From IMG/VR virus record IMGVR_UViG_3300007513_000001, positions 124,001 through 188,000 of that record: a DNA stretch of 64,000 nt. One strand, given 5' to 3'. A program made the translations under genes and the position numbers. How positions within the stretch are numbered: the stretch's first letter is position 1; each line of letters starts with the position of its first letter. The notes under the pieces are model-generated. The model did not search any database. It was not told where the DNA came from and was given only the letters and a program-made list of their open reading frames with translations. Shown here in pieces: positions 25,001 through 56,569 of the stretch.

Positions 25001-25332
25001 AAGCTAATATTGTTACTGTTACGGTTGGTGGAACTTTAGATGAAATAGATCATATTATTTTATATTTGGATCACAATGGTGTTGTCGCTCCTTATAAAGT
25101 CGGCTCGCCGCTGAATTCTAAAGTAGTGTTTGTAGATAAAGACCACTACGATTCGATTGGATACCTATATTATAGGGCCTCTATTTTCTTTGGCACAGAT
25201 AAAACTTATACTCCGGCGAGCGACAGTCCCGCGGGACAAATATTTAGATATAGCGATATCGACTTAAATACAGCTTCCGATGGAATTTGGGGAAGTACAG
25301 ATACCATAGAATCGCTAGAAGGAACGGGGTGA
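22000..25332 (+). CDS. Acidic structural protein (1110 aa) with an N-proximal Hint (intein-like) domain
   Basis: Hint blocks CVIEGTLI (A), SCTADHPIF (B) and VYNFEIDIVHSYFSDGILSHN (F/G). Confidence 0.75.
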   Translation: MGGFGDSILDSEGDGSSGTDSDSETFTPETHGRTFAEPGGPTSGPGGYTTPGGTTGTDEGSCVIEGTLIQTQRGSIPVEWVELGDKVYSYDFDSCKFGYFEVLEILLPVKKASWFKITTALGYTLSCTADHPIFSTSIESGELPVSEAEIGDPVYVFQDGEIVKDFLVSKEKIIEETIVYNFEIDIVHSYFSDGILSHNAGTKGRTAEETMESATDAASASSKSTWLGEVADTTSTFVSAGRVMGGYYAMDAADGSELSTTIPTEVDGWSGSSYYINSDVGPCITDMKIDLVGTDADSGRSNYLMTLECTAWIREIDLYNIGVSTVVGQLCKSSGGTTADYFSSVDPSSADVIFSTMSTGGPGQEFVDEIEETDYSVVEVCSDWPSDPGIVFGDNISLDSSHRLSLEYNQRDTATNVLLEASALLERSGDSTPTLINSLMEFNIDPALIGTLQSPIETWEQYYAGTLSPSGLYTVEGHEYRTQYRLLYEYQDSLTEVSSPVAAGIRSTSLNLAYTPMKFYFVGSMSDTQFEDFASDDLFLRLTYVASPMGTFTEADLTSDLKQGATSVSLDIQAAARGYFARDFETVNISVDSANAERPYDIIELVNPNPFYVNCTVEEISYLPSYERTAQTVKMEPLSTTSIHSLNNYQLTDTRFYRCAATSALDTEIQVYDAAEFNSWTRSVCIARADVSIDSNGDTWFINLPSSCTKIKWVAFEKGKEGATGIEKSVPSQNTIYKGTISVTTEEQISSSFTRRLDIGYGNGATYTVEFIFQDSDGTMLGYWDAAYTTARTFMDAPVQPISFAVVYDADESTGSVSITIAEAISSNLTSEYMTAATFGSSGGAWQSEVESIKNNAGMVTTYTITRQDCITGEEEVLSSNAIAGATTSYSINSGGESSRKVKFKVALKVASLAAASEQTAVTTKETRSGVGDVQFAYLAQELNWPQLFYGAANPGQVYGLTDYFEQLYTQKEVYFTIDPRGELSTPYVISVDVERSLIAQANIVTVTVGGTLDEIDHIILYLDHNGVVAPYKVGSPLNSKVVFVDKDHYDSIGYLYYRASIFFGTDKTYTPASDSPAGQIFRYSDIDLNTASDGIWGSTDTIESLEGTG
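22183..22596 (+). other. Hint / bacterial intein-like (BIL or PT-HINT type) autoprocessing domain, 138 aa, no homing endonuclease
   Basis: Starts at Cys62 (TGT 22183), has the TxxH motif, ends His-Asn (22591-22596); the +1 residue is Ala. Confidence 0.85.
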
Positions 25333-28300: not shown

Positions 28301-31138
28301 CCAACAATGAGATCTATCCACGAGAACTTTTGTAATGATGATGGTACTTTAGCTGCTACTGGAAAACCATTAGCAGAAATATTCGGCCATATTATTGATA
28401 ATATGGCAATGATAATGAAGCAGACTTATCCATTTTTTCATGTTGCTTATATACAATGGGAAGGGGTTGGTACCTCAAATGCCTATACGCGTTTTCCAAT
28501 ACTCGGAAATTATCACAACATGGTAGACGGAGATGCTGTTGCATCTGGAGAAACTCGAGAAAAAGTCGGCGCGCCCGTTTATCCCAGGATGCTGTACCCC
28601 TATTACAATTCCCACCACGATGATGCACTCGACAATGACAAGTTGTTGAAATACACTGACCACCTCGTTGAGCAATGGATTGAAATGAACCTGAGACAGA
28701 ACGACGATACCGCGACACATCTTGCAGTCGATATGCAAAATGTGACAACTAGCTGGTATGGTATGGAACAGACTGACTCGAATAAGATAGGCGAGGGCGT
28801 GGGTACCGCCATCAGCGGCGAACGAAGCCGTACGGGTGACACGATTAGATCAAATTTTGTTGGCGAAGAGGTTATATGGAACCGCGTTACTTTTCCAGAA
28901 ATTCTTGAAGCCGATGATATTATTTATTGGGATTCTACTTCGAATCACGACGACCAGGATATTTCATTAATAGATTTTTCTGTGCTTTTTGCCTTGACAG
29001 GAAACACGAGTTTAGATTCATTCGCGGATTCGGAAGTAAACGATCTCACAGACTTCACCGGAAGAGCTAGGTGGATAAAGGGAGGCTATTATAATAGCGA
29101 CGACGAAAACGTCGATGCATGGGGAGACATCATCTCATCTGGAGATACCGGTATGACGCCTCGCGCTTTTTGGGTGCCATGGTATATAGCTGCGATTCCC
29201 ACTATTATTGAAAAGCTACTAGAGTTAGAAATAACTCCTGCTGATACTGGTGCGCTCTCTTATACTTCATCTGATAGTGTTCTACAACGAATGATGGGTG
29301 GATTGGTTGAAAACAGTTCGGGGATATATAGTTTTGGAGATGACGGGATATTATTGGGTGTAGCCCCAATGTTATCTTTAACAGGCTACACCCCTTATTT
29401 AAACTCTGGAGGCACCGGGCCGACCGGTTATGCTGGCGTCGGTGGCCTGGGTCAAACAGGTAATGGGGGTGATGCTCGATTTGGTGGCACAGTCACCAAC
29501 GGCCATCTCCGATACATAAATAATTATATAAATAAGCTTTGGAGAGGTTTGATTTTATCCTGTAGAGAACCATATTTTAAAGCTATAGCTTTTAATTTGT
29601 TTGATAAGTTCGGCGAAAGAATCGAAGATTATTCTGGCACCGCTATTAAAGCTTTTAACAGAGACGGCGATGCGAAGAACCTCGAGCCGGTGGTTGAATA
29701 TATTAGTGATCTTATAGAGTCAGGCGAAGCTGGTGCCGATATATTGCAGAATTTAACAGATCAGCAGATGGCTTTGAAATATTTATCTTTTTATCGTCAG
29801 AAAGGAGATAGCAGCAGTGGATTGATACCAGCACAAGAGACCATAGACTCTAAATTAATGGCGGCAATTAATTTAATGTTTGACACCCGTGATATGTCAA
29901 AAGAGGGTTTGAGAACGTTGTGTTTTGGTATACCTGCTACCGGCGTAGAAGAGTTTGATGATTCCTCAAGTGCTAGTAATACCCTGGGTGGCTCTAGATA
30001 TATCCCACAAAACATGTGGATAGGAATTACAGGTTACAATTTTGAATACCCTCAAGTGTCACTAGAGCCCATTTGCATACCTTTTAATGCCAATTTGTTC
30101 GTTGTTACTGAAAGTTTTGAAGACTTAACTATTGAAGATATATTGTCTTATGGATCGATTAGCGATATAAGAGATAATATGAAATTCTTAAAAGCAGAAT
30201 TAAGCGTACAAGAAGGCGAAGGGGAATCGACTCAAATAATAGTGAATGATGACGTTAGGATTGCTACTTTATCTGATTTGTATGGAGATGATTTAAATGA
30301 TAGAATTCTTGTATCAGCATACCATATTCTAAGAAGCTATTTGTTAGAAAATTATTATAGGATAGTTTTAGGTGTCAGCATAAATGAAGACACATTCCCA
30401 AGCACCTCAGAAGAACTTGGTCTAGGAATTAATGATTATGCTTCTAATTTTGCTGAAGCTCTTTCATCTGAATTTTCATCCTACAATTCTGGAGTTTCAT
30501 CGGCAGTTTCTCAAGTGATGAGCTCATTATCAACTTCAGTTTCAAATTACAATACAATCGCTTCTGGATTTAGCACAACGTTGGGAGCAACTAGATTTGA
30601 AGATCTTTCAGATGAAATTTTAGATTCTGCCACTAATGCTGTGGGGTCAAGATTATATACTGCGGAATCTATGCGGCAGCAAATTATCGGAGCTAAGAGA
30701 TTTGATAGAGTTATATTTTTCCCATTTCATCCAGACGATTTTTGCGTACGCTGGGAAAACTCAGTGGGCACAACTGCGGGATCTCCAGCATGGGATGATA
30801 TGGTGCCTTATACTACTGGTGATGATGTCAGAGAATTGATAGGCTACCGCTTCACTGGCGAAACCGAGACCGCCGTCACTTTAGACGATGAGGGCTGGAT
30901 TTTAACTACCGGAGTAGAAGAAGCTGCAGACGGTGATGACACTGTACAAGAAAGTGATTATAATAATCTTTATGATAATATGCTCTTCAGCTACTCCGGT
31001 CTCGTGGAATACAGTTCCTGGGGCACTGTGATTGACACAGGGATAAAATTTAAAGCTCGTGACGGTGAAAATAGTATTAATTTCTTTAGAGCTTCCGTAA
31101 TTATATACGACGGAAATACGTTGGGAGACGATGCATAA
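25337..31138 (+). CDS. Giant acidic hypothetical protein (1933 aa), probably virion-associated
   Basis: Long ORF coupled to its neighbours in the structural cluster; no catalytic motif recognised. Confidence 0.55.
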   Translation: MSGTNDSTNFNLWTTDNLSTTSGESAVDISASSVALDSSVSDIPSTTNSSSGLSTTSATIDNAGTNRMLTEVLLNPLRPELLAILDLKSFKESSDGGLTRTDSSFYDYAVAKLAVRASDASTVAETIESLSTSYPDEFRSALAQYETSLSSSSSEIEMLKLAYMLKQYAILGPNFRDFLEIFDFEGSTSVDLGLVTDDEYNVYDYYRKVFGIREDDDIYVPSSTFFAEAIQQTAFMTVIGAPYTIMGFDLKSYDSDLRPTMSRSYVGWSNNFALPESSGPGKYNVFRRGGRSTEMGNISTMRRGGNRGYLDAERAVRIRVAVYNSLDGESENAYQSKHYPHTQVFSSILGNNLNSSYVVKQCQKTDGAFDTVLWSILKKKAGAIVNTSFSTPGASIFKSLAGWDPYLQTRFNSSKLEDDSLINRQFLPDLTMFENGIMGAAFEENECYVEKCKVQYTSDTGDTVETSSIRKTINEAFGSVDGSISFGDYESIANNLSSACKDFGKAMGKMHRSGKYQNLNKAEQNAPMNKGIFKNYPQTAFDPGSVFSACLETFKERFAENFEEYYLWYGFQLDPTIPDASTSWPRGMHATSTENMLGMFSQPDPHHIKRFASLMAYGIINSDDQVGNNNARCFGLAIAKQIAGAFVGDFYKGHLTFSNETEEVVEFETVTSTDSEGNPTTSVQETKFMAKVNANPLTGAPASLRGSSSGVWGVLVPPKDLVASDGSIMKNVADMNVDTDKATVSSDYLAIYQRSAHGNGFIADNAFAGESLGGTNFSDMQLSGWMQWAPWFNPEADNIYGGGAHFFTKQFCSLRSAGGGGQAYLKDKFDELLESSYQEAEISWGADTLHASGKTFTPKDSLFEACNMWKYSWHWAKDFHEESDVPYIPLLANLWAAEMIEMCLLTFRKILKTRGHNIGPASPADLCFPFEANTAPYTDSGGYADIIMDNLERVGETDCEDFPASECFWQAEAHDQDYSTGIGFRYWVPTMRSIHENFCNDDGTLAATGKPLAEIFGHIIDNMAMIMKQTYPFFHVAYIQWEGVGTSNAYTRFPILGNYHNMVDGDAVASGETREKVGAPVYPRMLYPYYNSHHDDALDNDKLLKYTDHLVEQWIEMNLRQNDDTATHLAVDMQNVTTSWYGMEQTDSNKIGEGVGTAISGERSRTGDTIRSNFVGEEVIWNRVTFPEILEADDIIYWDSTSNHDDQDISLIDFSVLFALTGNTSLDSFADSEVNDLTDFTGRARWIKGGYYNSDDENVDAWGDIISSGDTGMTPRAFWVPWYIAAIPTIIEKLLELEITPADTGALSYTSSDSVLQRMMGGLVENSSGIYSFGDDGILLGVAPMLSLTGYTPYLNSGGTGPTGYAGVGGLGQTGNGGDARFGGTVTNGHLRYINNYINKLWRGLILSCREPYFKAIAFNLFDKFGERIEDYSGTAIKAFNRDGDAKNLEPVVEYISDLIESGEAGADILQNLTDQQMALKYLSFYRQKGDSSSGLIPAQETIDSKLMAAINLMFDTRDMSKEGLRTLCFGIPATGVEEFDDSSSASNTLGGSRYIPQNMWIGITGYNFEYPQVSLEPICIPFNANLFVVTESFEDLTIEDILSYGSISDIRDNMKFLKAELSVQEGEGESTQIIVNDDVRIATLSDLYGDDLNDRILVSAYHILRSYLLENYYRIVLGVSINEDTFPSTSEELGLGINDYASNFAEALSSEFSSYNSGVSSAVSQVMSSLSTSVSNYNTIASGFSTTLGATRFEDLSDEILDSATNAVGSRLYTAESMRQQIIGAKRFDRVIFFPFHPDDFCVRWENSVGTTAGSPAWDDMVPYTTGDDVRELIGYRFTGETETAVTLDDEGWILTTGVEEAADGDDTVQESDYNNLYDNMLFSYSGLVEYSSWGTVIDTGIKFKARDGENSINFFRASVIIYDGNTLGDDA

Positions 31139-39198: not shown

Positions 39199-42100
39199 AT
39201 GTCTTTTAAATGTATCCACCTTTCTGATGTTCACTTCCGCGGGTTATCTCGTCACGAAGAATACAGAGAATCTTTTTTAGATTTCTTTGAAAAAGCTAGG
39301 AAAATTAACCCTGATTTAATATTTGTCGGTGGAGATATAGTCCATTCAAAAACACAGGGAATATCTCCAGAGTTAATTGATATTTTATCTTGGTGGTTTG
39401 AAGAATTAGCTAAAGTAGCTCCAACTCATGTTATTCTTGGAAATCACGATGGCTTAATTTCTAACCCACACAGGCAAGATGCTATATCTCCTATAATTTC
39501 AGCCCTTAATAACAGCAATTTGCACTTGTATAAGGATTCTGGAACTTACTCAACTGGCATCCCTGGCTTTAACTGGGGAGTTTTTTCTTGCTTTGATGAA
39601 GAGAATTGGGAAAATGTTAAGCCTGTAGAGGGAGAAGTAAATATTGCTCTGTTTCACGGTGGAGTGCTCGGATCTTTTACGGATATCAATTGGGAAATTG
39701 AGGGTGAAGTAGAGCACACATTCTTTAAAGATTTTGAGTTTGCTTTTCTTGGAGACATCCATAAATTTCAGTTTTTAAATGAGTCTAAAACTATAGCGTA
39801 CCCCGGATCTACTATACAACAAAACTACGGAGAAGATCCTGGAAAAGGATTTTTAGTGTGGGACATAAGATCAGCTGATGATTTTGACGTTGACTTTGTT
39901 GAAGTTTTTCACTCTAAGCCTTTCGCCACTATAGACTGGAAAGACACTGTTGTAGATACCGTTAGGGAATCTAGCAAATATCCAGATGGTTCGAGATTTA
40001 GGATTAGATCGCAATTTCAAATACCCCAAACCGAGATAAAGCATTTATATTCTGAGCTAAAAGAAAAGAAAAAAGCTTCTGAAATAGTTTTTAAATTCGA
40101 CGATATAAAATCTCAAATTATAGAATCATCAACTAACGATGAGTCTTTTTCTAATTTTAGAGACCCTTCAGTTATTTTAGACTTACTAAAGCAATACTAC
40201 AAAGAAGCGTCTATATCTGAAGAAGAATGGCAAGAAATTTCAGTGTTGTTGAAAAAATATACAGGCTCAGTAATAGAAAATGACACCCCCAGAAACGTTA
40301 AATGGTCAATAAAAAAGCTTCAATTTGACAATGTTTTTTCTTATGGAAAAAATAACGTTATCAACTTTGATTCTCTTCACGGCGTGGTGGGTCTTTTCGG
40401 TAAAAATAGATCTGGAAAATCTTCTATTCCAGGATCGATCATGTATGGTCTTTATAACACAACGGATCGAGGATCTATTAAAAATCTTCACGTAATCAAT
40501 ACCCGAAAGGGCCACTGTAAAGTTGAGCTTGATTTTTTAGTAAACGGAGTTTGTCACAGATTGGAGCGCCAATCAGTAAAACACCAAAACCGACGTGGCG
40601 AGATCAATGCTGTCACTCACTTAAACCTCTATCGTGTAGACACCAATGGAGAACTCAAGGATTTATCTGGTGGCCAACGAAGGGAAACTGACGCAATATT
40701 AAGATCTTTAGTTGGAACTTACGAAGACTTTATGTTAACTTCCTTTGCGTCGCAGGGAGGGATAAACACTTTTATAAAGCACCGCGCGACTAAAAGAAAA
40801 GAAATTTTAGCTAGTTTTTTAGATTTGAATATATTCGAAACTATTTTGAACAACGCAAAAGAAGACTCTATTCATATTAAGGCTTTACTAGACAAATCTC
40901 CTGAAAGAGAGTGGAACACTCTTATATTAGAAAAGGGCTTGATTTTAAAAAGTCTAAAAGAAGAGAGGCTGAAAATCGATTCTGATTTAGCTTCTGCAAA
41001 TTCTAAAATTCAAGAAATAAAAGTTGAATCAGCATCTTCTTTTTCTGAAATCATAACAGAAGCTGATTTAACTAAATCAGAAAGCGAGATATCTGAAAAT
41101 AGAGAACGAATTTCTGAGCTAAATTCAGCTGTAGAAACTAACCAGATAACTCTGGACAATCTCGATGCAAAATTAACTAAAATAGATCAACTAAAGAACC
41201 AGTTCCCAATTGATCAATTAAAAGAAAAATATGGAGCTCAACTTGAGCTAGAAAAGACTTTATTGGTTTTGGAGGGTAGTCTAGATCAAGAAAAATCTAC
41301 TTTAAAAAATAAGAGAGACTCTATCTCGCTTTTAGACCAAGTTCCCTGTGGAGATAAGTTTCCAACATGCAAATTTATTAAAAGATCTCATCTCGACAAA
41401 AGTCTAATTGAAGAACAAGTTAATTTAGTAGAAAATATAGAGAAGCAAATCCAATCAGCGAAAAAAGCTTTTTCTATATTGCTTGACGAAGATTTAAAGT
41501 CTAAAATTGATAAATACCAAAACCTTTTAGAAAAAGAGAGTAATTTCAAAATAGAAAGATCTACGTTAGAAGCTAAATCTAGAGAGGCAGAATCTGCAAA
41601 AGATAGAATTTCTTTGCTTATATTAGAATTAGAAAAAGAGTATGAAAGTCTAAAATCTAGAGTGGATATGTCAGATAAATCTGAGAGGATTAATTCTATA
41701 AAAATAGAGCTTATGAAACTCGAAAAAACAGCTAGAGATTTAGACGCTCAAAGAATAAGTACAAGTGAATCTATCGGACTAACGACTTCAGAGCTAGCTA
41801 AGCTAAAAGAAGAAAAAACTAGCTATGAAAATCTATTGATGGAGTGGAGGATATACGAAATTTTGATGAATGGCGTGAACAAAAAGGGCATACCACTTCA
41901 TATTTTGACAATGCAGCTTCCTAAAATCAATAAAGAAATTGCAAAGATACTACATGGAGTTGTAGAGTTTACTGTTGAGCTTGAAGCTGACTTAAAATCA
42001 AATTCTATGGATGTTTTTATAAATTATGGAGACTCAAAGAGAATTATTGAATGCGCTTCAGGCATGGAGAAAATGATATCCTCTATAGCTATTAGAGTGG

Positions 42101-42330
42101 CGTTAGTAAATGTTTCTTCTTTACCAAAGTGCGACACGTTTATAATTGATGAAGGATTCGGAGCTTTAGATGAAACTAACGTCGAAGCTTGTAATAGACT
42201 TCTTCAATCATTGAAAAAATGGTTTAAGAATATTTTAGTTATTTCTCACGTAGATGCTGTGAAAGATAGCGTAGATACTATTTTAGATATATTTTCAAAA
42301 GGTATTGATTCGCAGGTGATTCATGAATAA
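39199..42330 (+). CDS. Fused SbcD/Mre11 nuclease - SbcC/Rad50 ATPase (T4 gp47-gp46-like) in one polypeptide
   Basis: Phosphoesterase motifs SDVH, GGDIVH, GNHD, FHG, LGDIH and YPGS; then Walker A GKNRSGKS, Q-loop FASQG, coiled coil, signature ASGMEK, Walker B/D-loop IIDEGFGALD and H-loop ISH. Confidence 0.92.
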   Translation: MSFKCIHLSDVHFRGLSRHEEYRESFLDFFEKARKINPDLIFVGGDIVHSKTQGISPELIDILSWWFEELAKVAPTHVILGNHDGLISNPHRQDAISPIISALNNSNLHLYKDSGTYSTGIPGFNWGVFSCFDEENWENVKPVEGEVNIALFHGGVLGSFTDINWEIEGEVEHTFFKDFEFAFLGDIHKFQFLNESKTIAYPGSTIQQNYGEDPGKGFLVWDIRSADDFDVDFVEVFHSKPFATIDWKDTVVDTVRESSKYPDGSRFRIRSQFQIPQTEIKHLYSELKEKKKASEIVFKFDDIKSQIIESSTNDESFSNFRDPSVILDLLKQYYKEASISEEEWQEISVLLKKYTGSVIENDTPRNVKWSIKKLQFDNVFSYGKNNVINFDSLHGVVGLFGKNRSGKSSIPGSIMYGLYNTTDRGSIKNLHVINTRKGHCKVELDFLVNGVCHRLERQSVKHQNRRGEINAVTHLNLYRVDTNGELKDLSGGQRRETDAILRSLVGTYEDFMLTSFASQGGINTFIKHRATKRKEILASFLDLNIFETILNNAKEDSIHIKALLDKSPEREWNTLILEKGLILKSLKEERLKIDSDLASANSKIQEIKVESASSFSEIITEADLTKSESEISENRERISELNSAVETNQITLDNLDAKLTKIDQLKNQFPIDQLKEKYGAQLELEKTLLVLEGSLDQEKSTLKNKRDSISLLDQVPCGDKFPTCKFIKRSHLDKSLIEEQVNLVENIEKQIQSAKKAFSILLDEDLKSKIDKYQNLLEKESNFKIERSTLEAKSREAESAKDRISLLILELEKEYESLKSRVDMSDKSERINSIKIELMKLEKTARDLDAQRISTSESIGLTTSELAKLKEEKTSYENLLMEWRIYEILMNGVNKKGIPLHILTMQLPKINKEIAKILHGVVEFTVELEADLKSNSMDVFINYGDSKRIIECASGMEKMISSIAIRVALVNVSSLPKCDTFIIDEGFGALDETNVEACNRLLQSLKKWFKNILVISHVDAVKDSVDTILDIFSKGIDSQVIHE

Positions 42331-46637: not shown

Positions 46638-47477
46638 ATGCCGAAGCATAATAAAAAAAGAAATGTTGGAATTATCTATGAACAACTACTTTCTTCTCTA
46701 TCACGCGCTTTAGTAGAGGGCAAAAATGGAGAAGTTAAAATAGTAAAAGGAATCATTGATAAACACTTCAAGCCTGGAACAGAGCTCTATAAAGAGTTTA
46801 GGCTTTTTCAAGCTATGGTTAAAACAAAGGTGCCTCGAGAGTCTTTAGCTATTAAAATATTAGGAGAGGCAAAAACAGCTTCTGTTAATAGAAATGCAAA
46901 AAAACTCCAAAGAGAAAAATCTATGTTGATAAAAGACATAAATTACAAAATGGGCAATTCTAATTTTTATAACCAGAGAGTCCAAGAATATAAAGAATAC
47001 GCAACCGTTCAAAATCTTTTAAACTTGTGGGAAAAAGGTGAGGCGGGATCGCTACAAGAAGCCATCAGATATGAATCTTTAGTGCAGGACATGCTTCTAA
47101 GAGAAGAAGACCAGCATAATTTCGAAGATGAAAAAACTGAAGATGTAAATAAGCTAACTGTGAAAATAATGTTAGAAAAATTTAATAAAAAATATGATTC
47201 TAGCTTAAATCAAATGCAAACAAAAATAATTAAAGAATACGTTTTTTGTTCTGGAGAAAATTCTTTAAAGAGTTTATTAAACGAAGTAAAAATTGCTGCC
47301 ATGCACGAAATATCCCAAGTTCCAAATTCGCATAGCAATAAGGTCATTTGTGAAAAAGTTAACAAAGTTAAAAATAACATTTCTAGATTAGACGAAAATA
47401 TTCATGATGACGAAAATATTTCTAGATTCTTGTTGCTTTCTAAACTTTCAGAAGAACTTAAGGAGGATTCAGTATGA
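46638..47477 (+). CDS. Hypothetical head-module protein between portal and protease
   Basis: Start moved from 46626 to 46638 (AAGGA SD); N-terminus KHNKKRNVGIIYEQL; helical, Lys/Glu-rich. Confidence 0.65.
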   Translation: MPKHNKKRNVGIIYEQLLSSLSRALVEGKNGEVKIVKGIIDKHFKPGTELYKEFRLFQAMVKTKVPRESLAIKILGEAKTASVNRNAKKLQREKSMLIKDINYKMGNSNFYNQRVQEYKEYATVQNLLNLWEKGEAGSLQEAIRYESLVQDMLLREEDQHNFEDEKTEDVNKLTVKIMLEKFNKKYDSSLNQMQTKIIKEYVFCSGENSLKSLLNEVKIAAMHEISQVPNSHSNKVICEKVNKVKNNISRLDENIHDDENISRFLLLSKLSEELKEDSV

Positions 47478-48085
47478 GCGATTCTAAATTACATTTGCTC
47501 ACGAGTTGGACTCCGTTTGAATATACTGTAGATCAAATTAAAGAATCTAGAGAAAATAACGGCGGAAAAATTTTAATGCGAGGCGTACTTCAAAAGTCTG
47601 ATACGCTTAATCAAAACGGCAGAGTCTATCCTCGCGTTATCTTAGATAGAGAAGTTAGAAACTATCAAAAATTCATAGCAGAAAATCGAGCGCTTGGAGA
47701 GTGCGATCATCCCGACTCTTCAGTTGTCGAACTTAAAAACGTGTCTCACATAGTAAGAGAAGCTTATATGGACGGAGATATATGCTATGGAACTGTAGAG
47801 CTTTTAGATACTCCAGCTGGAAAAATACTCCAGAGTTTAGTCGAATCTGGAGTGACTTTAGGTATATCATCTCGAGGAGTTGGATCTACTAAAAATGAGG
47901 GAGATCACCAAGTAGTTCAAGACGATTTTCAATTAATTTGCTGGGATTTCGTTAGTGAGCCTTCGACTCCAGGAGCTTTTATGATGCGTGAAGGTGTAGA
48001 AGTTAGAAGGTCTGATTTAAATAAGCATTTTAATAAAACAGATAGAATTGATAGAATATTTAACGATATTTTAGATTGGGAGTAA
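47474..48085 (+). CDS. Prohead maturation protease (T4 gp21-like)
   Basis: GVLQKSDTLNQNGRVYP, ALGECDHP, VSHIV, LGISSRGVGS and WDFVSEPSTPGAF. Confidence 0.93.
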   Translation: MSDSKLHLLTSWTPFEYTVDQIKESRENNGGKILMRGVLQKSDTLNQNGRVYPRVILDREVRNYQKFIAENRALGECDHPDSSVVELKNVSHIVREAYMDGDICYGTVELLDTPAGKILQSLVESGVTLGISSRGVGSTKNEGDHQVVQDDFQLICWDFVSEPSTPGAFMMREGVEVRRSDLNKHFNKTDRIDRIFNDILDWE

Positions 48086-50555: not shown

Positions 50556-52244
50556 ATGAGCAAAAATCTTTATAACGAAGCCATCGCAGAAGCAAAACAA
50601 CTGCGTGACATGGCTGAACAAAACGCAAAAAATAAAATTATTGAAGCCGTTACTCCTAGAATCAGAAGTCTTATTGAACAGCAGCTTATTGATGATGTTG
50701 AAGAAGAATCAGATTTAGTAATAGGGGATGAAGCAGAAGAATCTGCAGAAGAAATGGTAGATTTAGCAATTGAAGAATTGCCAATGGCTGCGCCGGCAGA
50801 AGAGCCACCCCCCGCTGCTCCCACTGTATCGATTACTGTTCAGGGTGATCTAGATATGGATCTTGGCGAGGGTGATGATGACGAAGAAGAAGATCTTATT
50901 TTAAGTCAAGAGTCTTTTTTGCGTTTAGAGAATTTTTTGCATAATGTGTCAAAAACAAAGAATATTTCTGGCCGTGTTGTTTCTTTATCTAGAAAATTCA
51001 ACATGCTAAGAGAAGCGATTGATGGAGTAAATCTTAATAGATGTAGCTCTGTTGAAAAACAAACAGCGATTATATTTTATGGTCGTCTGTTAGAAGAAGT
51101 TATTACTTTATCTAATAATTTAATACTTATGAAAGAGTCCATTGACAATAGACTCGAATTACAATTAACTCAACTAATAAAGGAGATGAGCAAAATGTCT
51201 AGAAGACGTGACGCAGCAGCTTTCAGGAGACTCTTTGAAGAGTTAACAAAGGATGAGAGTCTTGAGGAAGTGGGCATGTTTGAACAAGAAGAAGAAGAAG
51301 TTGACCTCGATGTAGATGTCGAGGAAGACGTAGAAGTCGCAGCTGAACCCGATGTGGAAGCAGCTGAAGACGCAATATTAGATCTTGGGGCCGCACTCGG
51401 TCTCGACGTTGAAGTCGCACCAGCCGAAGAAGAGGTTGAAGTCGAGGAAGATGTCGAAGAAGAAGAAGAAATTACTTTAGAAAGTGATGATTCTGACGAC
51501 GGGGACGGAGAAGATCTTGACGAAGTTTACGAAATTGATGAAGCTGCGCTACGTCGTGAGCTCTTTAAAATGAGAAGACTTCGTGAGCAAGAAGAGGGAA
51601 GAGCTGCCGCAGCCGATCCTGCACTTGCACATGGTGGAGAAGATGAAGGTGACGTTATTGTCGATGTCGACGAAGACGCTCTTCTTAACGCTCTCGCTGA
51701 TGAACTAGGTGATCCTGGAGTTCCTGCACCGCAGGTTGAAGCTTTTATTCGCCGTAGACTCCGCAGAGCAAGCCGCCAGTTAGCTGAATCACAGCGACGT
51801 AATCGTAGAACTCGTGGAACTCGTAGAAACAGAAGAATTTCAGAGTCACGTCGCACCAGAAGAGCTGCTCCAGCCCGTAACACTAAAAGAGCCGTCATGG
51901 CTGAAAGAACTGTTACTAAATTAAAGAAGCAGCTTGCAGAAATGAATCTTTTTAACGCTAAGCTTCTGTTTGCTAATAAGCTCATGCAAAATCGTGGGCT
52001 TTCAACAAAGCAGCAGCGTGTAGTAGTCGAAGCACTCGACAAAGCACGCACAATCAGAGAAGCCAAACTCCTTTATAAGAGTTTGAGTGCATCTCTAAAT
52101 CGGGGTTCCGGTAAGACTCTATCTGAGAGTCGCTCCCGATTGCTCGCATCTTCATCCAAATCAACCCGGTCAGGCGCGCCTGCCAGCAATGGGAATGAGG
52201 TAGATCGTTGGGCTTTACTCGCCGGGTTAACGTCAGACAAATAG
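50556..52244 (+). CDS. Prohead scaffold/core protein
   Basis: Directly upstream of MCP; very acidic, with coiled-coil C-terminus (LAEMNLFNAKLLFANKL) ending RWALLAGL. Confidence 0.75.
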   Translation: MSKNLYNEAIAEAKQLRDMAEQNAKNKIIEAVTPRIRSLIEQQLIDDVEEESDLVIGDEAEESAEEMVDLAIEELPMAAPAEEPPPAAPTVSITVQGDLDMDLGEGDDDEEEDLILSQESFLRLENFLHNVSKTKNISGRVVSLSRKFNMLREAIDGVNLNRCSSVEKQTAIIFYGRLLEEVITLSNNLILMKESIDNRLELQLTQLIKEMSKMSRRRDAAAFRRLFEELTKDESLEEVGMFEQEEEEVDLDVDVEEDVEVAAEPDVEAAEDAILDLGAALGLDVEVAPAEEEVEVEEDVEEEEEITLESDDSDDGDGEDLDEVYEIDEAALRRELFKMRRLREQEEGRAAAADPALAHGGEDEGDVIVDVDEDALLNALADELGDPGVPAPQVEAFIRRRLRRASRQLAESQRRNRRTRGTRRNRRISESRRTRRAAPARNTKRAVMAERTVTKLKKQLAEMNLFNAKLLFANKLMQNRGLSTKQQRVVVEALDKARTIREAKLLYKSLSASLNRGSGKTLSESRSRLLASSSKSTRSGAPASNGNEVDRWALLAGLTSDK

Positions 52245-52268
52245 AATAAACATAAAGGAGAAATTCAA

Positions 52269-54167
52269 ATGTCTAAGAAATTTACACTGAATCAGTTAAC
52301 CGAGGGTATTCGTCAACGTAATGTTGGAACGGGTAACAGAAGGTTAATTGAAAAGTGGTCCCGCACTGGTCTCCTTAGAGGCCTTGAGGGCACCACTCGC
52401 GAAAATATGGCTACGCTGCTTGAAAATCAGGCATCACAGGTCTTACGCGAGGCTAACTCAATTTCCACCGGTGGTGGAAACTTAACTAGTTCTGGAGACC
52501 TCCGCGGTTTTCAAAACATTGCATTCCCAATCGTTCGTAGAGTTTTCGGCGGCCTGGTTGCTAATGAGCTTGTATCTGTACAGCCCATGAGCCTTCCATC
52601 TGGCCTCCTTTTCTATCTTGATTACACCTACGGAACCAACGTTGGTGGTCGCGACGACTCAGGTATCGATGCATCTTACCCATCTGGAAGTTCAATTTAC
52701 AATTCTCCAGTCGGTAAAGGCATACGTTCTGGTTCTCTTGGAATCGGCGGTCAGTATAATCTTGCTGGCTCTGGTTATTCAAGAGTACATAAGATTGCTT
52801 CGAGCGTAACGCTCCTTGCATCTGGCGCCTATATGGGGAATACAACATTCTCAGCTGACGCTATCGATGAAGTAAGACGTATGGTCGCTACTGGTTCTGA
52901 TGGCAAGCTTCTACAGTTCGATGAGCAGATTTGTAGAATTATTGAAGATAACCCCAACGATGCAGGCCTCGGCGTATTCAAGGCTTACTTTGTTGACTTT
53001 AGTTCAGGCAAGTTTAGTAATGCAGACGCCACTATGGTAAAAGACTTTGCTCTTATACCACCTGATGGCACTGCGCCGACTATTCTTTCACCAACCTTGA
53101 AATCTCAGGATATTCAAGCAAGTGGCGATAGAGTGCTTAATGTTCGTAGGCTTAATCAGCTTGGTAAGTGGGATGGAACTTCGTTCACCGCAGATCCGCT
53201 AGTTAGAGCTGGTGATGCTAACGCAGCTATTCTAATGATCGTTTCTGGTACTAAGGGCAGCACGGCCGAGCAGACTTATAGCGTTGACTATGTTCTCAGC
53301 CCAAGTCTTGATGCAGGGTCAGATGGTGATGCTCTTACTATTCCAACCTTTGAGTCTAACTTCGCTACTTCGCCTTCACCAGAGATCCCAGAGATCGACA
53401 TTAAGGTAGAGTCAATCGCAGTTACTGCAGTAACCCGTAAGCTCCGCGCTCGCTGGTCACCAGAACTCGCACAGGACTTGAATGCTTATCACAGTCTTGA
53501 CGCTGAAGTTGAGCTTACTCAGATCCTTTCCGAGCAGATTGCTCTTGAGCTTGATAGAGAGATCCTTAATGATCTACTCACTCAGGCTAAGACGAACTTC
53601 TACTGGTCACGTTCACCAGGCAAGTTCATGAACAAGAGAAATGGTAACCTTGTCACTCCTGGTGGAGCTGGTTCTATTGGTCCAAGCTTCACAGGCACCG
53701 TCCGCGAATGGTATGAGACTCTGGTCGAGACCATTATTGATGTTGCTAATGAGATCCACAGACTTACTCTAAGAGGATCAGCTAACTTCATCGTAGTGTC
53801 ACCCGACATCGCGACTATTCTTGAAGCGTCTGTTCTTTACCGTCCAAGCTACAGCTTAGATGGTGATGGCCAGGTTGGTACTCCAATGAGCATTGGTGCA
53901 GAGAAGATGGGAACCCTTAGTAACCGTTTCACGGTATACAAAGATCCTTACTTCCCACGCAACAAAGTTCTCGTAGGATTCAAGGGCGGAAGCTATCTTG
54001 AGACCGGTTATGTATACGCTCCATACGTACCACTTATTGTCACTCCAACAATCTTCGCTCCAGAGGACTTCACCCCACGTAAGGGTGTTATGACTCGCTA
54101 TGGTAAGAAGATGGTTCGTTCTGACTTCTATGGTACTGTTACAGTTGCAGATCTTAACGTAATCTAA
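52269..54167 (+). CDS. Major capsid protein, copy 1 (T4 gp23-like HK97 fold)
   Basis: FPIVRRVFGGLVANELVSVQPMSLPSGLLFYL, TRKLRARWSPELAQDLNAYHSLDAEVEL, ELDREIL, YAPYVPL and PRKGVMTRYG; strong AAGGAG SD. Confidence 0.95.
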   Translation: MSKKFTLNQLTEGIRQRNVGTGNRRLIEKWSRTGLLRGLEGTTRENMATLLENQASQVLREANSISTGGGNLTSSGDLRGFQNIAFPIVRRVFGGLVANELVSVQPMSLPSGLLFYLDYTYGTNVGGRDDSGIDASYPSGSSIYNSPVGKGIRSGSLGIGGQYNLAGSGYSRVHKIASSVTLLASGAYMGNTTFSADAIDEVRRMVATGSDGKLLQFDEQICRIIEDNPNDAGLGVFKAYFVDFSSGKFSNADATMVKDFALIPPDGTAPTILSPTLKSQDIQASGDRVLNVRRLNQLGKWDGTSFTADPLVRAGDANAAILMIVSGTKGSTAEQTYSVDYVLSPSLDAGSDGDALTIPTFESNFATSPSPEIPEIDIKVESIAVTAVTRKLRARWSPELAQDLNAYHSLDAEVELTQILSEQIALELDREILNDLLTQAKTNFYWSRSPGKFMNKRNGNLVTPGGAGSIGPSFTGTVREWYETLVETIIDVANEIHRLTLRGSANFIVVSPDIATILEASVLYRPSYSLDGDGQVGTPMSIGAEKMGTLSNRFTVYKDPYFPRNKVLVGFKGGSYLETGYVYAPYVPLIVTPTIFAPEDFTPRKGVMTRYGKKMVRSDFYGTVTVADLNVI

Positions 54168-54169
54168 TA

Positions 54170-54237
54170 ATGTTTGATTAATCGAATGGCGGCGTCCTGC
54201 GCATAGCGTCGGGGCGCCGTCTCAGATTAAAAAGCAT
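54170..54237 (+). promoter_or_regulatory. Long imperfect RNA stem-loop between the two capsid genes, no U-tract
   Basis: Core GGCGGCGTCCTGCGC-ATA-GCGT(C)GGGGCGCCGTC (54188-54221) with several G-U pairs, extended by TTAATC/GATTAA and ATGTTT/AAGCAT. Confidence 0.65.
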
Positions 54238-54260
54238 CCATTTAAAAGGAATAAAACAAA

Positions 54261-56150
54261 ATGTCAAAAAAATTTACACTGAATCAGTTAACTGAAGGTA
54301 TTCGCCAACGCAACGTTGGAACGGGTAACAGAAGGTTAATTGAAAAGTGGTCCCGCACTGGTCTCCTTAGGGGATTGGAAGGTACCACTCGCGAAAATAT
54401 GGCGACCTTACTTGAAAACCAAGCATCGCAAGTACTTCGTGAAGCCAACTCAATTTCCACCGGTGGTGGAAACTTAACTTCGTCTGGAGATCTTCGTGGT
54501 TTTCAGAATATCGCATTTCCAATTGTTCGCAGAGTTTTCGGCGGACTAGTTGCTAATGAATTAGTGTCAGTTCAGCCAATGAGCCTTCCGTCTGGATTGC
54601 TTTTTTATCTAGACTACACATATGGAACCTCTGTAGGTGGCCAGTCTGATGGTGATTCTGCTACGTACCCTTCAGGAAGCTCTATTTATAATGCTCCTAC
54701 GGGTAAAGGCGTACGTTCTGGTTCTCTTGGAATCGGTGGCCAGTACAATCTTGCTGGCTCTGGTTATTCAAGAGTCCACCAGTTAGCTAACACTATTACT
54801 CTACTTGCTTCTGGAGCATACCAGGGAACTACTACGTTCTCGGGCGGTGGCACTAGCTATAAACGCATGACCGCTACCGGTTCTGATGGTAAGCTTCTCC
54901 AGTTTGACGAACAGATTTGTAGGCTGATCGAAGATCATCCAAACAGCGAAGGCTTAGGCGTTTTCACTGCTGTTTTTGTAGACCTGAACTCTACTCAGTT
55001 TAGTAATGGTGATCTTTCAATGGTTAAGGATTTCGCTCTTATACCATCGGCATCCGCTATTAACTTTGCAGGTCCCTCGCAGACTCTTAAAGATCAAGAC
55101 GTTCAAATTTCAGGAAACAAGGTTATTAACGTTAGACGACTTAACCAGATTGGTAAATGGGATGGAACTTCATTCACTCACGATCCGTTAACTAAGGCGG
55201 GTGATTCAAACGCTGCAATATTGATGATTATCTCAGGTACAGATTCTTTCTCTGAGGGAATGGATATTGATTATATTTTATCACCAAGCTTAAATGTCGG
55301 CAGTGATGGAGACGCGCTAACGATTCCAACCTTTGAGTCTAACTTCGGTACTACACCTTCACCAGAGATTCCAGAGATTGATATTAAAGTTGAATCTATT
55401 GCGGTTACTGCAGTTACTAGAAAGCTCCGCGCTCGCTGGTCACCAGAGCTTGCTCAAGATCTTAACGCGTATCACTCTTTAGACGCAGAAGTTGAGCTTA
55501 CTCAGATCCTTTCTGAACAAATTGCTCTTGAGTTGGATCGTGAAATTCTTAATGATCTACTCACTCAGGCTAAGACGAACTTCTACTGGTCGCGCTCACC
55601 AGGTAAGTTCATGAACAAGCGGAGTGGCGCTCTAGTTACTCCAGGCGGAGCAGGGAACATTGGTCCAAGCTTCACCGGTACAGTTCGTGAATGGTATGAG
55701 ACTCTAGTTGAGACCATTATTGATGTTGCTAATGAGATTCATAGGCTTACATTACGCGGATCAGCTAACTTCATCGTAGTTTCTCCAGATATTGCAACTA
55801 TCCTCGAAGCTTCAGTTCTGTATAGACCTACTTATAGCTTGGACGGAGACGGCCAAGTCGGAACTCCAATGAGTATTGGAGCCGAACAGGTTGGAACCCT
55901 TAGTAACCGTTTCACGGTATACAAAGATCCTTACTTCCCAAGAAATAAGGTTCTCGTAGGATTCAAGGGCGGAAGCTATCTTGAGACCGGTTATGTATAC
56001 GCACCTTATGTGCCTCTAATCGTTACTCCAACAATCTTCGCTCCAGAGGACTTCACGCCGCGTAAGGGCGTTATGACTCGCTATGGCAAGAAGATGGTTA
56101 GAAGCGATTTTTATGGTACTGTTACGGTTGCAGATCTTAACGTAATCTGA
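54261..56150 (+). CDS. Major capsid protein, copy 2 (T4 gp23-like HK97 fold)
   Basis: First 123 aa identical to copy 1; last 264 aa differ at 6 positions; central ~245 aa insertion is divergent. Confidence 0.95.
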   Translation: MSKKFTLNQLTEGIRQRNVGTGNRRLIEKWSRTGLLRGLEGTTRENMATLLENQASQVLREANSISTGGGNLTSSGDLRGFQNIAFPIVRRVFGGLVANELVSVQPMSLPSGLLFYLDYTYGTSVGGQSDGDSATYPSGSSIYNAPTGKGVRSGSLGIGGQYNLAGSGYSRVHQLANTITLLASGAYQGTTTFSGGGTSYKRMTATGSDGKLLQFDEQICRLIEDHPNSEGLGVFTAVFVDLNSTQFSNGDLSMVKDFALIPSASAINFAGPSQTLKDQDVQISGNKVINVRRLNQIGKWDGTSFTHDPLTKAGDSNAAILMIISGTDSFSEGMDIDYILSPSLNVGSDGDALTIPTFESNFGTTPSPEIPEIDIKVESIAVTAVTRKLRARWSPELAQDLNAYHSLDAEVELTQILSEQIALELDREILNDLLTQAKTNFYWSRSPGKFMNKRSGALVTPGGAGNIGPSFTGTVREWYETLVETIIDVANEIHRLTLRGSANFIVVSPDIATILEASVLYRPTYSLDGDGQVGTPMSIGAEQVGTLSNRFTVYKDPYFPRNKVLVGFKGGSYLETGYVYAPYVPLIVTPTIFAPEDFTPRKGVMTRYGKKMVRSDFYGTVTVADLNVI

Positions 56151-56170: not shown

Positions 56171-56205
56171 GGGGCGGCACTTAATGTGCCGCCCCTTTTG
56201 TTTTT
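56171..56205 (+). terminator. Rho-independent terminator
   Basis: GGGGCGGCAC-TTAAT-GTGCCGCCCC perfect 10 bp stem followed by TTTTGTTTTT. Confidence 0.92.
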
Positions 56206-56260
56206 ATTAAACGTTTCTGAGAAAAAAATATAATCTAATCTGAATTTGGAGATTCTTATC

Positions 56261-56539
56261 ATGCCTGAAACTACTAAAACTACGAAACCTCGCACAACTA
56301 GAAAAACAACTGCAAAAAAAGAAACCAACACTGATCTTGATGCAGTAAAAAATGCGTTGGCTCGACTTCAACTTCGCGTTGATACCCTTGAAGCTAAGTG
56401 TGCTAAGTTGGAAAAGGCTAAACCAGTAGCTAATTCAGGCGGCGGACTTTCTGAAGAGAGATGGAGTTCACTTAAGCTATTCTTAGAAAAAAAGTTTGGA
56501 AGAGAGCTCTTGAAAAGCAGTGGTATTTGGTTTAAATAA
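56261..56539 (+). CDS. Small hypothetical protein (Lys/Thr-rich N-terminus, coiled coil)
   Basis: GGAG SD at 56248 favours ATG 56261. Confidence 0.6.
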   Translation: MPETTKTTKPRTTRKTTAKKETNTDLDAVKNALARLQLRVDTLEAKCAKLEKAKPVANSGGGLSEERWSSLKLFLEKKFGRELLKSSGIWFK

Positions 56540-56569
56540 GTTTTTTTGAAAAAAATATAGTCTTAATGA

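What the first reader, a model, noticed from the sequence alone, without database searches (positions are those of the whole stretch)
52269..56150. Two tandem major capsid genes: near-identical shell core, divergent surface insertion domain (possible mosaic or two-coat capsid)
Seen: two full-length gp23-like genes of 632 and 629 aa. Residues 1-123 are identical and the last 264 residues differ at only 6 positions, while the central ~245 aa carries many substitutions and indels. Established: in T4 gp23/gp24-type proteins the segment between the QPM..P.G..F motif and the IPE/IDI strand is the outward-facing insertion domain, and T4 uses a distant paralog (gp24) for vertices. Inference: the two proteins keep the same lattice and scaffold interfaces and could co-assemble while displaying different surfaces. 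Options are a mosaic shell, an early-stage hexamer/pentamer split, or condition-dependent coats (for example against capsid-sensing defences). This is my best candidate for an undescribed system in this window.
Basis: partly seen in the sequence, partly recalled or inferred. Interest (0 to 1): 0.85.

Follow-up and report, generated by a model that had tools for sequence, protein, structure and literature searches.

The report
Two conserved tandem capsid genes
An uncultured marine T4-like phage and its closest relatives carry two adjacent, long-maintained major capsid genes with the same shell-forming core but different outward-facing domains, so their capsid is probably built from two coat proteins, perhaps an early stage of the split seen in T4 (gp23/gp24).

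Summary
ORFs 52269-54167 (632 aa) and 54261-56150 (629 aa) are both T4-type major capsid proteins (MCPs). Residues 1-123 are identical, the last 264 differ at 6 sites, and 78 of 84 differences fall in residues 124-368.

It is not a recent duplication or a chimeric assembly:
- The identical protein cores differ at about 40% of third codon positions (dS about 1).
- The same pair occurs in many independent assemblies.
- Three further diverged lineages carry an orthologous pair.
- Copies group by position, not by genome (AU p 2.5e-7).

More than 130 more distant relatives, and one close one, have a single MCP gene.

Both copies are under purifying selection. Copy 1 keeps the ancestral sequence and MCP-like codon bias. 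Copy 2 evolved 1.4-2.8 times faster in the middle domain, has weaker codon bias, and lies behind a conserved hairpin that lacks a U-tract.

The variable segment is an insertion domain in the E-loop. It is hypervariable across the whole family, so the contrast between core and surface is not specific to the paralogues.

The most likely reading is a two-component shell with copy 2 as a minor subunit carrying a variant surface. Whether copy 2 is restricted to vertices, like gp24, or mixed into the shell is unresolved. This is a new variant of a known kind.

The parts
47474..48085 (+). Prohead core serine protease (T4 gp21-like). Context only: it would process both MCPs.
   Evidence: Pfam Peptidase_S77 at E 5e-24.
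50556..52244 (+). Probable scaffold (gp22-like position), a 562-aa acidic repeat-rich protein immediately upstream of MCP1.
   Evidence: No family hit. Assigned by position in a T4-type head module and by its D/E-rich repeats. This is an inference.
52254..52268 (+). Start of the duplicated unit, containing the ribosome-binding site of copy 1 (AAAGGAG).
   Evidence: The direct repeat 52254-52553 / 54246-54545 starts 15 nt before each ATG. Sequence read.
52269..54167 (+). MCP copy 1 (632 aa). It retains the ancestral-type sequence and has the stronger codon bias, so it is presumably the principal shell subunit.
   Evidence: Pfam Gp23. AF2 model with pLDDT 87.8 and Foldseek match to T4 gp23* at E 1e-21. 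GC3 0.40 and ENC 45.0, like single-copy MCPs. Fewer lineage-specific changes than copy 2.
52269..52451 (+). N-terminal propeptide region of copy 1 (aa 1-61), with candidate L-x-E protease sites at residues 50-52 and 59-61. It is identical in copy 2 (54261-54443).
   Evidence: L59, E61, E52 and N53 are invariant in 60 homologues. The region is helical in the model. Cleavage itself is inferred from T4 gp23 biology.
52638..53372 (+). Insertion (I) domain of copy 1, aa 124-368.
   Evidence: It lies between E-loop strands 111-121 and 376-386 in the model. It holds 78 of the 84 paralogue differences. It is hypervariable across the family.
54188..54221 (+). GC-rich hairpin between the two copies with no U-tract. 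Probably a weak terminator, attenuator or mRNA-stabilising stem.
   Evidence: RNAfold prediction. An equivalent hairpin without a T-run is present in all four tandem lineages. It was not called as a terminator.
54246..54260 (+). Ribosome-binding region of copy 2 (AAAGGAA). No promoter-like motif lies upstream.
54261..56150 (+). MCP copy 2 (629 aa). It is intact and under purifying selection, evolves faster in the I-domain, and has weaker codon bias.
   Evidence: Pfam Gp23. Monophyletic with orthologues at 100/100 support. Core omega is about 0.03 and I-domain omega about 0.1-0.18 among copy-2 orthologues. GC3 0.36 and ENC 47.8.
54630..55355 (+). Insertion (I) domain of copy 2, aa 124-365.
   Evidence: Aligned to copy 1. 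It is 68% identical to the copy-1 I-domain and 74-80% identical to copy-2 orthologues.
56171..56205 (+). Canonical intrinsic terminator (10-bp stem followed by TTTTGTTTTT) that ends the MCP transcription unit.
   Evidence: The homologous hairpin plus T-run follows copy 2 in all tandem lineages and follows the single MCP in L097 and L103.

Best explanation
A tandem duplication of the T4-type major capsid gene arose once, in the ancestor of a small clade of uncultured marine large-genome myoviruses. Both copies have been kept since then.

The two proteins share the N-terminal propeptide, which holds the scaffold contact and protease sites, and the HK97 P and A domains, which hold all the lattice contacts. 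They are transcribed from the same late transcript. They should therefore enter the same procapsid.

Copy 1 is the principal subunit and keeps the ancestral state. Copy 2 is made in smaller amounts, because it is read through an attenuated hairpin and has weaker codon bias. After a burst of change in its E-loop insertion domain, it presents a different outer surface.

I consider it slightly more likely that copy 2 is mixed into capsomers as a minor variant subunit, giving a two-component or mosaic shell, than that it is strictly sorted to the pentons. The reason is that every determinant known to sort T4 gp23 from gp24 is identical in the two copies.

Shown: the pair is real, old and orthologous across lineages, under purifying selection, asymmetric in rate, and the variable segment is an E-loop insertion domain.

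Inferred: co-transcription, lower expression of copy 2, co-assembly, and the position of copy 2 in the shell.
For: - **Real.** The exact pair lies on contigs from at least 5 JGI samples and several ENA assemblies.
- **Conserved.** Orthologous pairs occur in L095/L096, L098-L100, and L101/L102/L104.
- **Old.** dS is about 1 in cores that are identical as protein.
- **One origin.** Copy 2 is monophyletic at 100/100. Grouping by genome is rejected (AU p 2.5e-7 and 2e-4).
- **Both functional.** All copies have intact ORFs. Omega is 0.02-0.04 in the core and about 0.1-0.18 in the I-domain.
- **Same assembly interfaces.** Residues 1-123 are identical in the window phage. No copy-specific substitution in the core is fixed across lineages.
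- **Asymmetry.** Changes unique to copy 1 versus copy 2 in the I-domain are 15/32, 23/33, 17/43 and 16/44. At the fixed differences, copy 1 has the ancestral state in 4 of 7 and copy 2 in 0 of 7.
- **Diverged in place.** No single-copy phage has an I-domain closer to copy 2 than copy 1 is.
- **Expression cues.** The hairpin between the copies lacks a U-tract in all four lineages, while a canonical terminator follows copy 2. No promoter-like motif precedes copy 2. Copy 2 has lower GC3 and higher ENC in every lineage.
- **Structure.** The model has pLDDT 87.8 and matches T4 gp23* at E 1e-21. The variable segment is inserted in the E-loop.
- **Precedent.** Paralogous HK97-fold shell proteins co-assemble into mixed shells in a two-component encapsulin (PMC12407261).
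Against: - There are no expression, proteomic or structural data for either protein. Co-assembly and stoichiometry are inferred.
- In every tailed phage with two MCP paralogues that I found described structurally (T4 gp23/gp24; mycobacteriophage Jabs MCPh/MCPp), the second protein is penton-specific. The prior therefore favours the vertex reading.
- In T4 the I-domain sits on the neighbouring subunit within a capsomer and behaves differently in pentamers and hexamers. Divergence confined to the I-domain could therefore be enough for sorting.
- The codon-bias differences are modest, and the hairpin has not been shown to attenuate transcription.
Confidence: 0.45

Rival explanations
1. Copy 2 is a nascent vertex (penton) protein. 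This would be an independent, young re-run of the gp23 to gp24 split: copy 1 builds the hexamers and copy 2 builds the 11 pentamers.
For: - Copy 2 lies immediately downstream of the MCP gene. This matches the adjacent ORF72/ORF73 order of Jabs MCPh/MCPp and, from my own knowledge, T4 gene 24 after gene 23.
- There are cues for lower expression.
- Copy 2 has a long stem branch and a faster rate.
- Both copies have been retained for a long time.
- In T4 the I-domain locks neighbouring subunits within a capsomer and behaves differently in gp24 pentamers (PMC9546572).
- gp24 is thought to derive from gp23 by duplication (PMC9958956).
- Single-copy relatives have no gp24-like gene nearby, so a vertex specialist would be a new gain.
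Against: - No copy-specific substitution is fixed in the A or P domains, whereas some T4 gp24-bypass mutations map to the A domain.
- Copy 2 keeps the full-length propeptide, identical to that of copy 1. gp24 loses only 10 residues and gp23 loses 65.
- The paralogue differences fall at family-hypervariable positions. Only one falls at a site conserved in at least 80% of the family.
- Copy 1 is nearly ancestral, so it presumably still forms pentamers, as the single-copy MCPs of relatives must do.
Confidence: 0.32
2. The pair is a dosage duplicate. Two copies simply raise MCP output for a very large capsid, and the I-domain divergence is the ordinary fast drift of that domain with no distinct role. 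A mosaic shell would be a by-product.
For: - The cores are identical, and the differences occur only at positions that vary freely in the family.
- These are large-genome phages, with contigs of 229-293 kb for this phage.
Against: - More than 130 relatives with comparable contig sizes (up to 318 kb) have one copy.
- The rates and codon bias are asymmetric, and copy 2 shows a burst on its stem followed by constraint.
- Dosage duplicates in phages are usually young and easily lost. This pair has survived until its synonymous sites are near saturation.
Confidence: 0.12
3. The two genes are alternative coats. Only one is used in a given infection, depending on host or condition, for example to evade a capsid-sensing defence.
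For: None directly. The I-domain is hypervariable across the family, which is compatible with some external selective agent.
Against: - Both copies are on one strand and apparently in one transcription unit.
- No promoter-like motif precedes copy 2, and no invertible segment or switch-like repeats were found.
- Making two sensed proteins in one cell would increase exposure to an abortive-infection sensor, not decrease it (my inference).
Confidence: 0.05
4. The tandem is an assembly artefact: alleles from two strains joined head to tail.
For: The window derives from a metagenome, and the two copies are about 80% identical in DNA, similar to two related strains.
Against: - The same junction appears in independent assemblies from different samples and pipelines.
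- Orthologous pairs with co-diverging copies occur in other projects, including a TARA project assembly (ENA PRJEB1787) and GenBank MDSZ.
- The intergenic hairpin that has lost its U-tract is conserved, and each copy has its own RBS.
- No sampled single-copy genome carries a copy-2-type gene.
Confidence: 0.02

Closest known systems
Bacteriophage T4 gp23 (hexamer MCP) and gp24 (vertex protein)
   Same: Both are paralogous T4-type HK97 MCPs with an E-loop insertion domain that arose by duplication of the MCP gene. The second gene follows the first in a head module with portal, gp21-type protease, scaffold and MCP.
   Different: T4 gp23 and gp24 are anciently diverged along their whole length, with about 20% identity by my own knowledge. 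They have different propeptides (65 versus 10 residues), and some gp24-bypass mutations map to the A domain. Here the pair is 86% identical, with identical propeptide and core, and differs only in the I-domain. Whether copy 2 is vertex-specific is unknown.
Mycobacteriophage Jabs MCPh (ORF72, hexons) and MCPp (ORF73, pentons)
   Same: Two HK97-fold capsid proteins from adjacent genes build one capsid with no decoration proteins (bioRxiv 10.64898/2026.07.24.740622).
   Different: The Jabs proteins differ greatly in size (594 versus 257 residues) and belong to a siphophage with a T=9 capsid. The pair here is nearly equal in length and nearly identical in its core.
Two-component Family 2B encapsulin (Streptomyces lydicus Sl-Enc1 and Sl-Enc2)
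   Same: Two paralogous HK97-fold shell proteins co-assemble into mixed shells of variable composition (PMC12407261). This is the only documented mosaic HK97 shell I found. From my own knowledge, Family 2B shell proteins also carry an E-loop insertion domain. A Family 2B shell appears among the fold matches.
   Different: That shell is a cellular nanocompartment, not a virus. It has no scaffold, protease or portal, and it is unrelated at the sequence level.
Single-gene T4-superfamily capsids without gp24 (for example Sinorhizobium phage PhiM9)
   Same: These show that a gp23-type protein can build both hexamers and pentamers (PMC4621102). This is the presumed ancestral state here, as in the more than 130 single-copy relatives.
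   Different: They have one MCP gene and a minimal E-loop insertion. This family has an insertion domain of about 245 residues, and the clade has two genes.

Membership tests
T4-type major capsid protein (Pfam Gp23, PF07068) | Significant match to the family profile | tested here: met
   Both copies score 253-254 bits against a cutoff of 24.4. The profile of the family hits T4 gp23 chains in the PDB at E 2e-35.
T4-type major capsid protein (Pfam Gp23, PF07068) | HK97 fold with an insertion domain in the E-loop | tested here: met
   AF2 model of copy 1 has pLDDT 87.8 and pTM 0.86. Foldseek matches T4 gp23* at E 1.4e-21 and HK97 gp5 at E about 1e-8. Residues 124-368 lie between strands 111-121 and 376-386. 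Copy 2 was not modelled separately; its core is 98-100% identical.
T4-type major capsid protein (Pfam Gp23, PF07068) | N-terminal propeptide removed by a gp21-type prohead protease | tested here: inconclusive
   A Peptidase_S77 gene is present at 47474-48085. Invariant L-x-E motifs occur at residues 50-52 and 59-61. Cleavage itself cannot be tested with these tools.
gp24-type vertex (penton) protein | MCP paralogue encoded next to the MCP gene | tested here: met
   Copy 2 starts 93 nt after copy 1.
gp24-type vertex (penton) protein | Core (A domain or A loop) adapted to five-fold contacts and distinct from the hexamer protein | tested here: not met
   No copy-specific substitution is fixed outside the I-domain. 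Only 6 differences occur in the last 264 residues of the window pair, and none of them is conserved across lineages.
gp24-type vertex (penton) protein | Propeptide and processing different from the MCP (T4: 10 versus 65 residues) | tested here: not met
   Residues 1-123 are identical in the window pair and 94-97% identical in the other lineages.
gp24-type vertex (penton) protein | Low stoichiometry (55 copies per capsid) and location at 11 vertices | not testable with these tools
   There are only indirect cues for lower expression of copy 2: the hairpin lacking a U-tract and the weaker codon bias.
Two-component (mixed) HK97 shell | Two paralogous shell proteins encoded together and made together | tested here: inconclusive
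   The genes are tandem on the same strand. No promoter-like motif lies between them, and the single canonical terminator follows copy 2. Co-transcription is inferred, not measured.
Two-component (mixed) HK97 shell | Both proteins present within the same shell or capsomers | not testable with these tools
   This needs proteomics, cross-linking or cryo-EM. No multimer prediction tool was available.

The most novel reading that the evidence does not exclude
These phages build an obligately two-component, mosaic HK97 capsid. Hexamers, and possibly pentamers, would contain a mixture of two MCP paralogues with the same lattice-forming core but two different I-domain surfaces. This would be permanent heterozygosity for a hypervariable capsid surface domain, fixed by gene duplication. 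No tailed phage is known to do this.
Probability: 0.4. Interest if true: 0.75.

Novelty: new variant of a known kind. Interest (0 to 1): 0.55.

Why it matters
MCP gene duplication is known only from end-states, such as T4 gp23/gp24 and Jabs MCPh/MCPp, where the paralogues are so diverged that the path cannot be read. In this clade both copies are intact, 86% identical, differ only in the exposed I-domain, and come with orthologues and single-copy outgroups.

That makes two questions testable. How does a second coat protein first become useful? Does sorting to vertices start in the I-domain rather than in the A domain? If the shell is instead mixed, it would be the first mosaic HK97 virus capsid.

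The family-wide hypervariability of the 245-residue I-domain in an abundant marine phage group is also an unexplained signal of external selection on capsid surfaces. More than 4,800 representatives of the wider gp23-type family were found, and at least 8,000 proteins matched at E below 1e-20.

Tried and rejected
1. **Recent duplication or collapsed repeat.** Rejected. dS is about 1 in the cores and there are no long identical DNA tracts.
2. **Concerted evolution or gene conversion keeping the cores identical within a genome.** Rejected as the main cause. The core DNA tree groups by position, and the AU test rejects grouping by genome. Third-position identity is only slightly raised for W_1/W_2 (61%) and C_1/C_2 (60%) against a baseline of about 50%, and it is 45% for B_1/B_2. 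Old, patchy conversion cannot be excluded.
3. **Import of the copy-2 I-domain from another phage.** No sampled single-copy MCP has a closer I-domain.
4. **A scaffold-MCP1 fusion suggested by a 952-aa gene call in L013.** The TAG stop is intact, so this is a gene-caller artefact. No read-through protein was used in any search.
5. **Scaffold, MCP1 and MCP2 share one reading frame in the window.** This is coincidental. The spacers in other lineages are 58-62 nt.
6. **A third, gp24-like paralogue in the window.** None was found by hmmsearch with a family profile. The 546-aa gene near the MCP of Flavobacterium phage immuto is not gp23-like.
7. **First AF2 run with a shallow alignment.** It gave a poor core (pLDDT 56), and its Foldseek search gave nothing significant. 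It was redone with a diverse alignment.
8. **Fold of the isolated I-domain.** The ESM Atlas returned only other Gp23 fragments and weak F5/8-type-C-like hits (TM 0.32). The fold remains unassigned.
9. **Placement of the single-copy relative L097.** Divergence before the duplication and secondary loss of copy 2 are both unrejected.
10. **Literature searches.** I found no report of near-identical tandem MCP genes in T4-like phages. The library is incomplete.

Full report
**Observation**

The window holds two same-strand ORFs, 52269..54167 (632 aa) and 54261..56150 (629 aa). Both match Pfam Gp23 (PF07068) at E about 1e-75. BLASTP gives 86% identity. A column-by-column count finds 84 differing columns:
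- none in residues 1-123;
- 78 (including 7 gap columns) in residues 124-368;
- 6 in the last 264 residues.

**Not a recent copy and not an artefact**

Where the proteins are identical, the DNA is only 77-93% identical per 20-codon window, and every DNA difference there is synonymous. NG86 estimates are as follows:

| Region | dS | omega |
|---|---|---|
| N-terminal core | about 1.0 | 0.02 |
| C-terminal core | about 0.97 | 0.04 |
| Middle (124-368) | saturated | about 0.11 |

The duplicated unit runs from 15 nt before the ATG to about 30 nt past the stop. Each copy has its own Shine-Dalgarno sequence.

The exact proteins lie side by side on contigs from at least five JGI samples, including a 228,680-bp contig, and on several ENA assemblies. 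Three further diverged lineages carry the same arrangement:
- L095/L096, 636 + 627 aa, on a 242-kb contig from another project;
- L098-L100, 635 + 629 aa;
- L101/L102 (an ENA assembly under the TARA project accession PRJEB1787) and L104 (GenBank MDSZ), which are essentially one lineage.

A chimeric join of two strains is therefore excluded for practical purposes.

**History**

Every MCP gene at 75% identity or less in about 70 IMG/VR loci is single. So are 79 of the 80 metagenome loci; the exception is L104. Of those single-copy metagenome loci, 60 have at least 300 nt of flank on both sides of the gene. L103 (75% identical) and L097 (85% identical) are also single.

In an ML protein tree, L097 plus all tandem copies form a clade with 100/100 support. 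The copy-2 sequences are monophyletic at 100/100 on a long stem.

The middle domain groups by position:
- copy-1 orthologues are 74-92% identical;
- copy-2 orthologues are 73-79% identical;
- paralogues are 61-70% identical.

The core DNA also groups by position. AU tests reject grouping by genome (p 2.5e-7 and 2e-4). They leave open whether L097 diverged before the duplication or lost copy 2 afterwards. No sampled single-copy phage has an I-domain closer to copy 2 than copy 1 is, so copy 2 diverged in place and was not imported.

The picture is one duplication, followed by co-divergence of both copies until their synonymous sites are close to saturation.

**Selection and asymmetry**

All copies are intact. 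Among orthologues of either copy, omega is about 0.03 in the core and 0.1-0.18 in the middle domain.

With L097 as outgroup, copy 2 carries 1.4-2.8 times more unique changes in the middle domain than copy 1: 15/32, 23/33, 17/43 and 16/44. Three of the four comparisons are significant, although they share the stem branch and are not independent.

Only seven positions are fixed differently between the copy-1 and copy-2 clades, and all lie in the middle domain. Copy 1 has the outgroup state at four of them and copy 2 at none.

**The core/surface contrast is a family property**

Single-copy orthologues whose cores are 86-90% identical are only 44-62% identical in the middle. The paralogue differences fall at sites that are hypervariable across the family. 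Mean entropy is 2.44 bits at differing sites against 1.27 bits at identical sites (p 1e-16). Only one difference, T255S, falls at a site conserved in at least 80% of the family. The paralogues therefore differ in the same way as two orthologous "serotypes" of this MCP.

**Structure**

A first model built from a shallow alignment was poor. With 120 diverse homologues the copy-1 model reaches pLDDT 87.8 and pTM 0.86. Its Foldseek matches are:
- T4 gp23* at E 1.4e-21;
- T4 gp24 (1yue) at E 4e-12;
- HK97 gp5 at E about 1e-8.

Residues 124-368 form a beta-rich domain between strands 111-121 and 376-386. That is an insertion in the E-loop, like the T4 I-domain but about 245 residues long. Its fold was not assigned. 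Dips in pLDDT within the domain (191-210, 271-280, 331-370) coincide with the segments that carry indels.

The N-terminal 61 residues are helical and carry invariant L-x-E motifs. A gp21-type protease gene is present in the window.

**Expression signals**

In all four tandem lineages a GC-rich hairpin lies between the copies but lacks a U-tract. A canonical hairpin plus T-run follows copy 2, and it also follows the single MCP of L097 and L103. No promoter-like motif precedes copy 2. An AAAATATAAT-type motif follows the terminator in each genome.

Codon bias is as follows:

| Genes | GC3 | ENC |
|---|---|---|
| Copy 1 (three lineages) | 0.40, 0.44, 0.36 | 45.0, 43.3, 44.8 |
| Copy 2 (same lineages) | 0.36, 0.35, 0.28 | 47.8, 46.5, 46.3 |
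| Closest single-copy MCPs (L097, L103, L019, L021) | 0.38-0.43 | 41-45 |
| Other genes in the window | 0.23-0.33 | - |

Copy 1 resembles the single-copy MCPs, and copy 2 lies nearer the genome average. These cues suggest co-transcription with lower output of copy 2. They are indirect.

**Context**

The neighbourhood is a T4-type head and neck module: terminase large subunit, portal, gp21-type protease, small core proteins, an acidic 562-aa presumed scaffold, MCP1, MCP2, a 92-aa ORF, gp13-like and gp15-like proteins, and the sheath. No other gp23/gp24-like ORF is present in the 64-kb window. The cultured relatives Flavobacterium phage immuto and Microcystis phage Mel-JY01 have one MCP gene and no gp23-like neighbour.

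**Mechanism**

Both proteins share the propeptide and the whole lattice-forming core, and they appear to be made from one transcript. The default expectation is that both enter the same procapsid. Long retention, a burst of change followed by constraint in the copy-2 I-domain, and weaker expression cues fit neofunctionalisation of a minor subunit with a variant surface.

Two positions in the shell remain possible.

The vertex (gp24-like) reading is favoured by:
- precedent in T4 and in mycobacteriophage Jabs;
- gene position;
- the intracapsomer role of the I-domain.

It is weakened by:
- the absence of any fixed difference in the core;
- the identical propeptide;
- the lack of changes at conserved sites.

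The mixed-shell reading has a precedent only in a two-component encapsulin. It needs no sorting determinant. I put the mixed shell slightly ahead (0.45 against 0.32). Pure dosage (0.12), alternative coats (0.05) and artefact (0.02) follow.

**Novelty**

MCP duplication leading to a second capsid protein is a known kind of event. What my searches did not find described is a young pair that differs only in the I-domain, is conserved across a clade, and has clear orthology and single-copy outgroups. I rate it a new variant of a known kind, of moderate to good interest. It offers a tractable natural intermediate for how two-protein capsids arise.

**Limits**

- All functional statements are inferred from sequence.
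- No multimer prediction or codon-model (branch-site) software was available.
- Several contigs of the window phage come from related samples. Independence therefore rests mainly on the other lineages and other projects.

Noticed in passing
window 39199-42330 (+): A single 1043-aa ORF combines an N-terminal calcineurin-like phosphoesterase (Mre11/gp47-like, E 3e-12) with a C-terminal SMC/SbcC-Rad50-like ATPase (gp46-like). The nuclease and the ATPase, which are separate genes in T4, appear fused here.
   Followed up: no
window 22000-25332 (+): An 1110-aa ORF has a weak, sub-threshold Hint / intein-splicing-like match at residues 68-200 (PT-HINT E 1.8e-5, below the gathering score).
   Followed up: no
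window 3078-8678, 8759-15808, 25337-31138 (+): Three very large ORFs (1866, 2349 and 1933 aa) have no Pfam family above threshold. They are probably tail-fibre or baseplate-type structural proteins of a large myovirus.
   Followed up: no
window 56213-56236 and 56540-56563 (+): The motif GTTTYTGAGAAAAAAATATA(A/G)TCT is repeated in the two intergenic regions after MCP2 and after the 92-aa ORF. A similar AAAATATAAT element follows the MCP terminator in related phages, so it may be a late-type promoter. The 12-mer occurs in the window more often than in shuffled sequence (8 against 2.4), but only these two matches are exact.
   Followed up: partly
window 56261-56539 (+): A conserved small ORF (88-101 aa in all relatives) lies directly after the MCP terminator. 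It has a basic Thr/Lys-rich N-terminus and no family hit. It could be a head decoration or accessory protein.
   Followed up: no
window 50556-52244 (+): The presumed scaffold protein is built of degenerate acidic (D/E/V-rich) repeats and has no Pfam or PHROG hit.
   Followed up: no
L013:2-2860: The public gene call (952 aa) reads through the intact TAG between the scaffold gene and MCP1. This is a gene-caller artefact, possible because the two genes are in the same frame. It is not a real fusion.
   Followed up: yes
L003:4718-6610: A population variant of copy 2 is 630 aa long and ends ...NVIL instead of ...NVI (C-terminus extended by one Leu) in one JGI sample. MCP1 also shows a variant at 99.8% identity in other contigs.
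   Followed up: partly
Family-wide (A1, A2; loci L019-L183): This MCP family, about 620-690 aa with a 245-residue I-domain, is very abundant in marine and freshwater metagenomes. At least 8,000 proteins match at E below 1e-20, and contigs reach 318 kb. Its closest cultured relatives are only 37-47% identical, so this is a large, essentially uncultured far-T4 group.
   Followed up: partly
L183:1-1812: The single MCP gene is split into two ORFs in different frames in this short contig. This is probably a sequencing or assembly frameshift.
   Followed up: no
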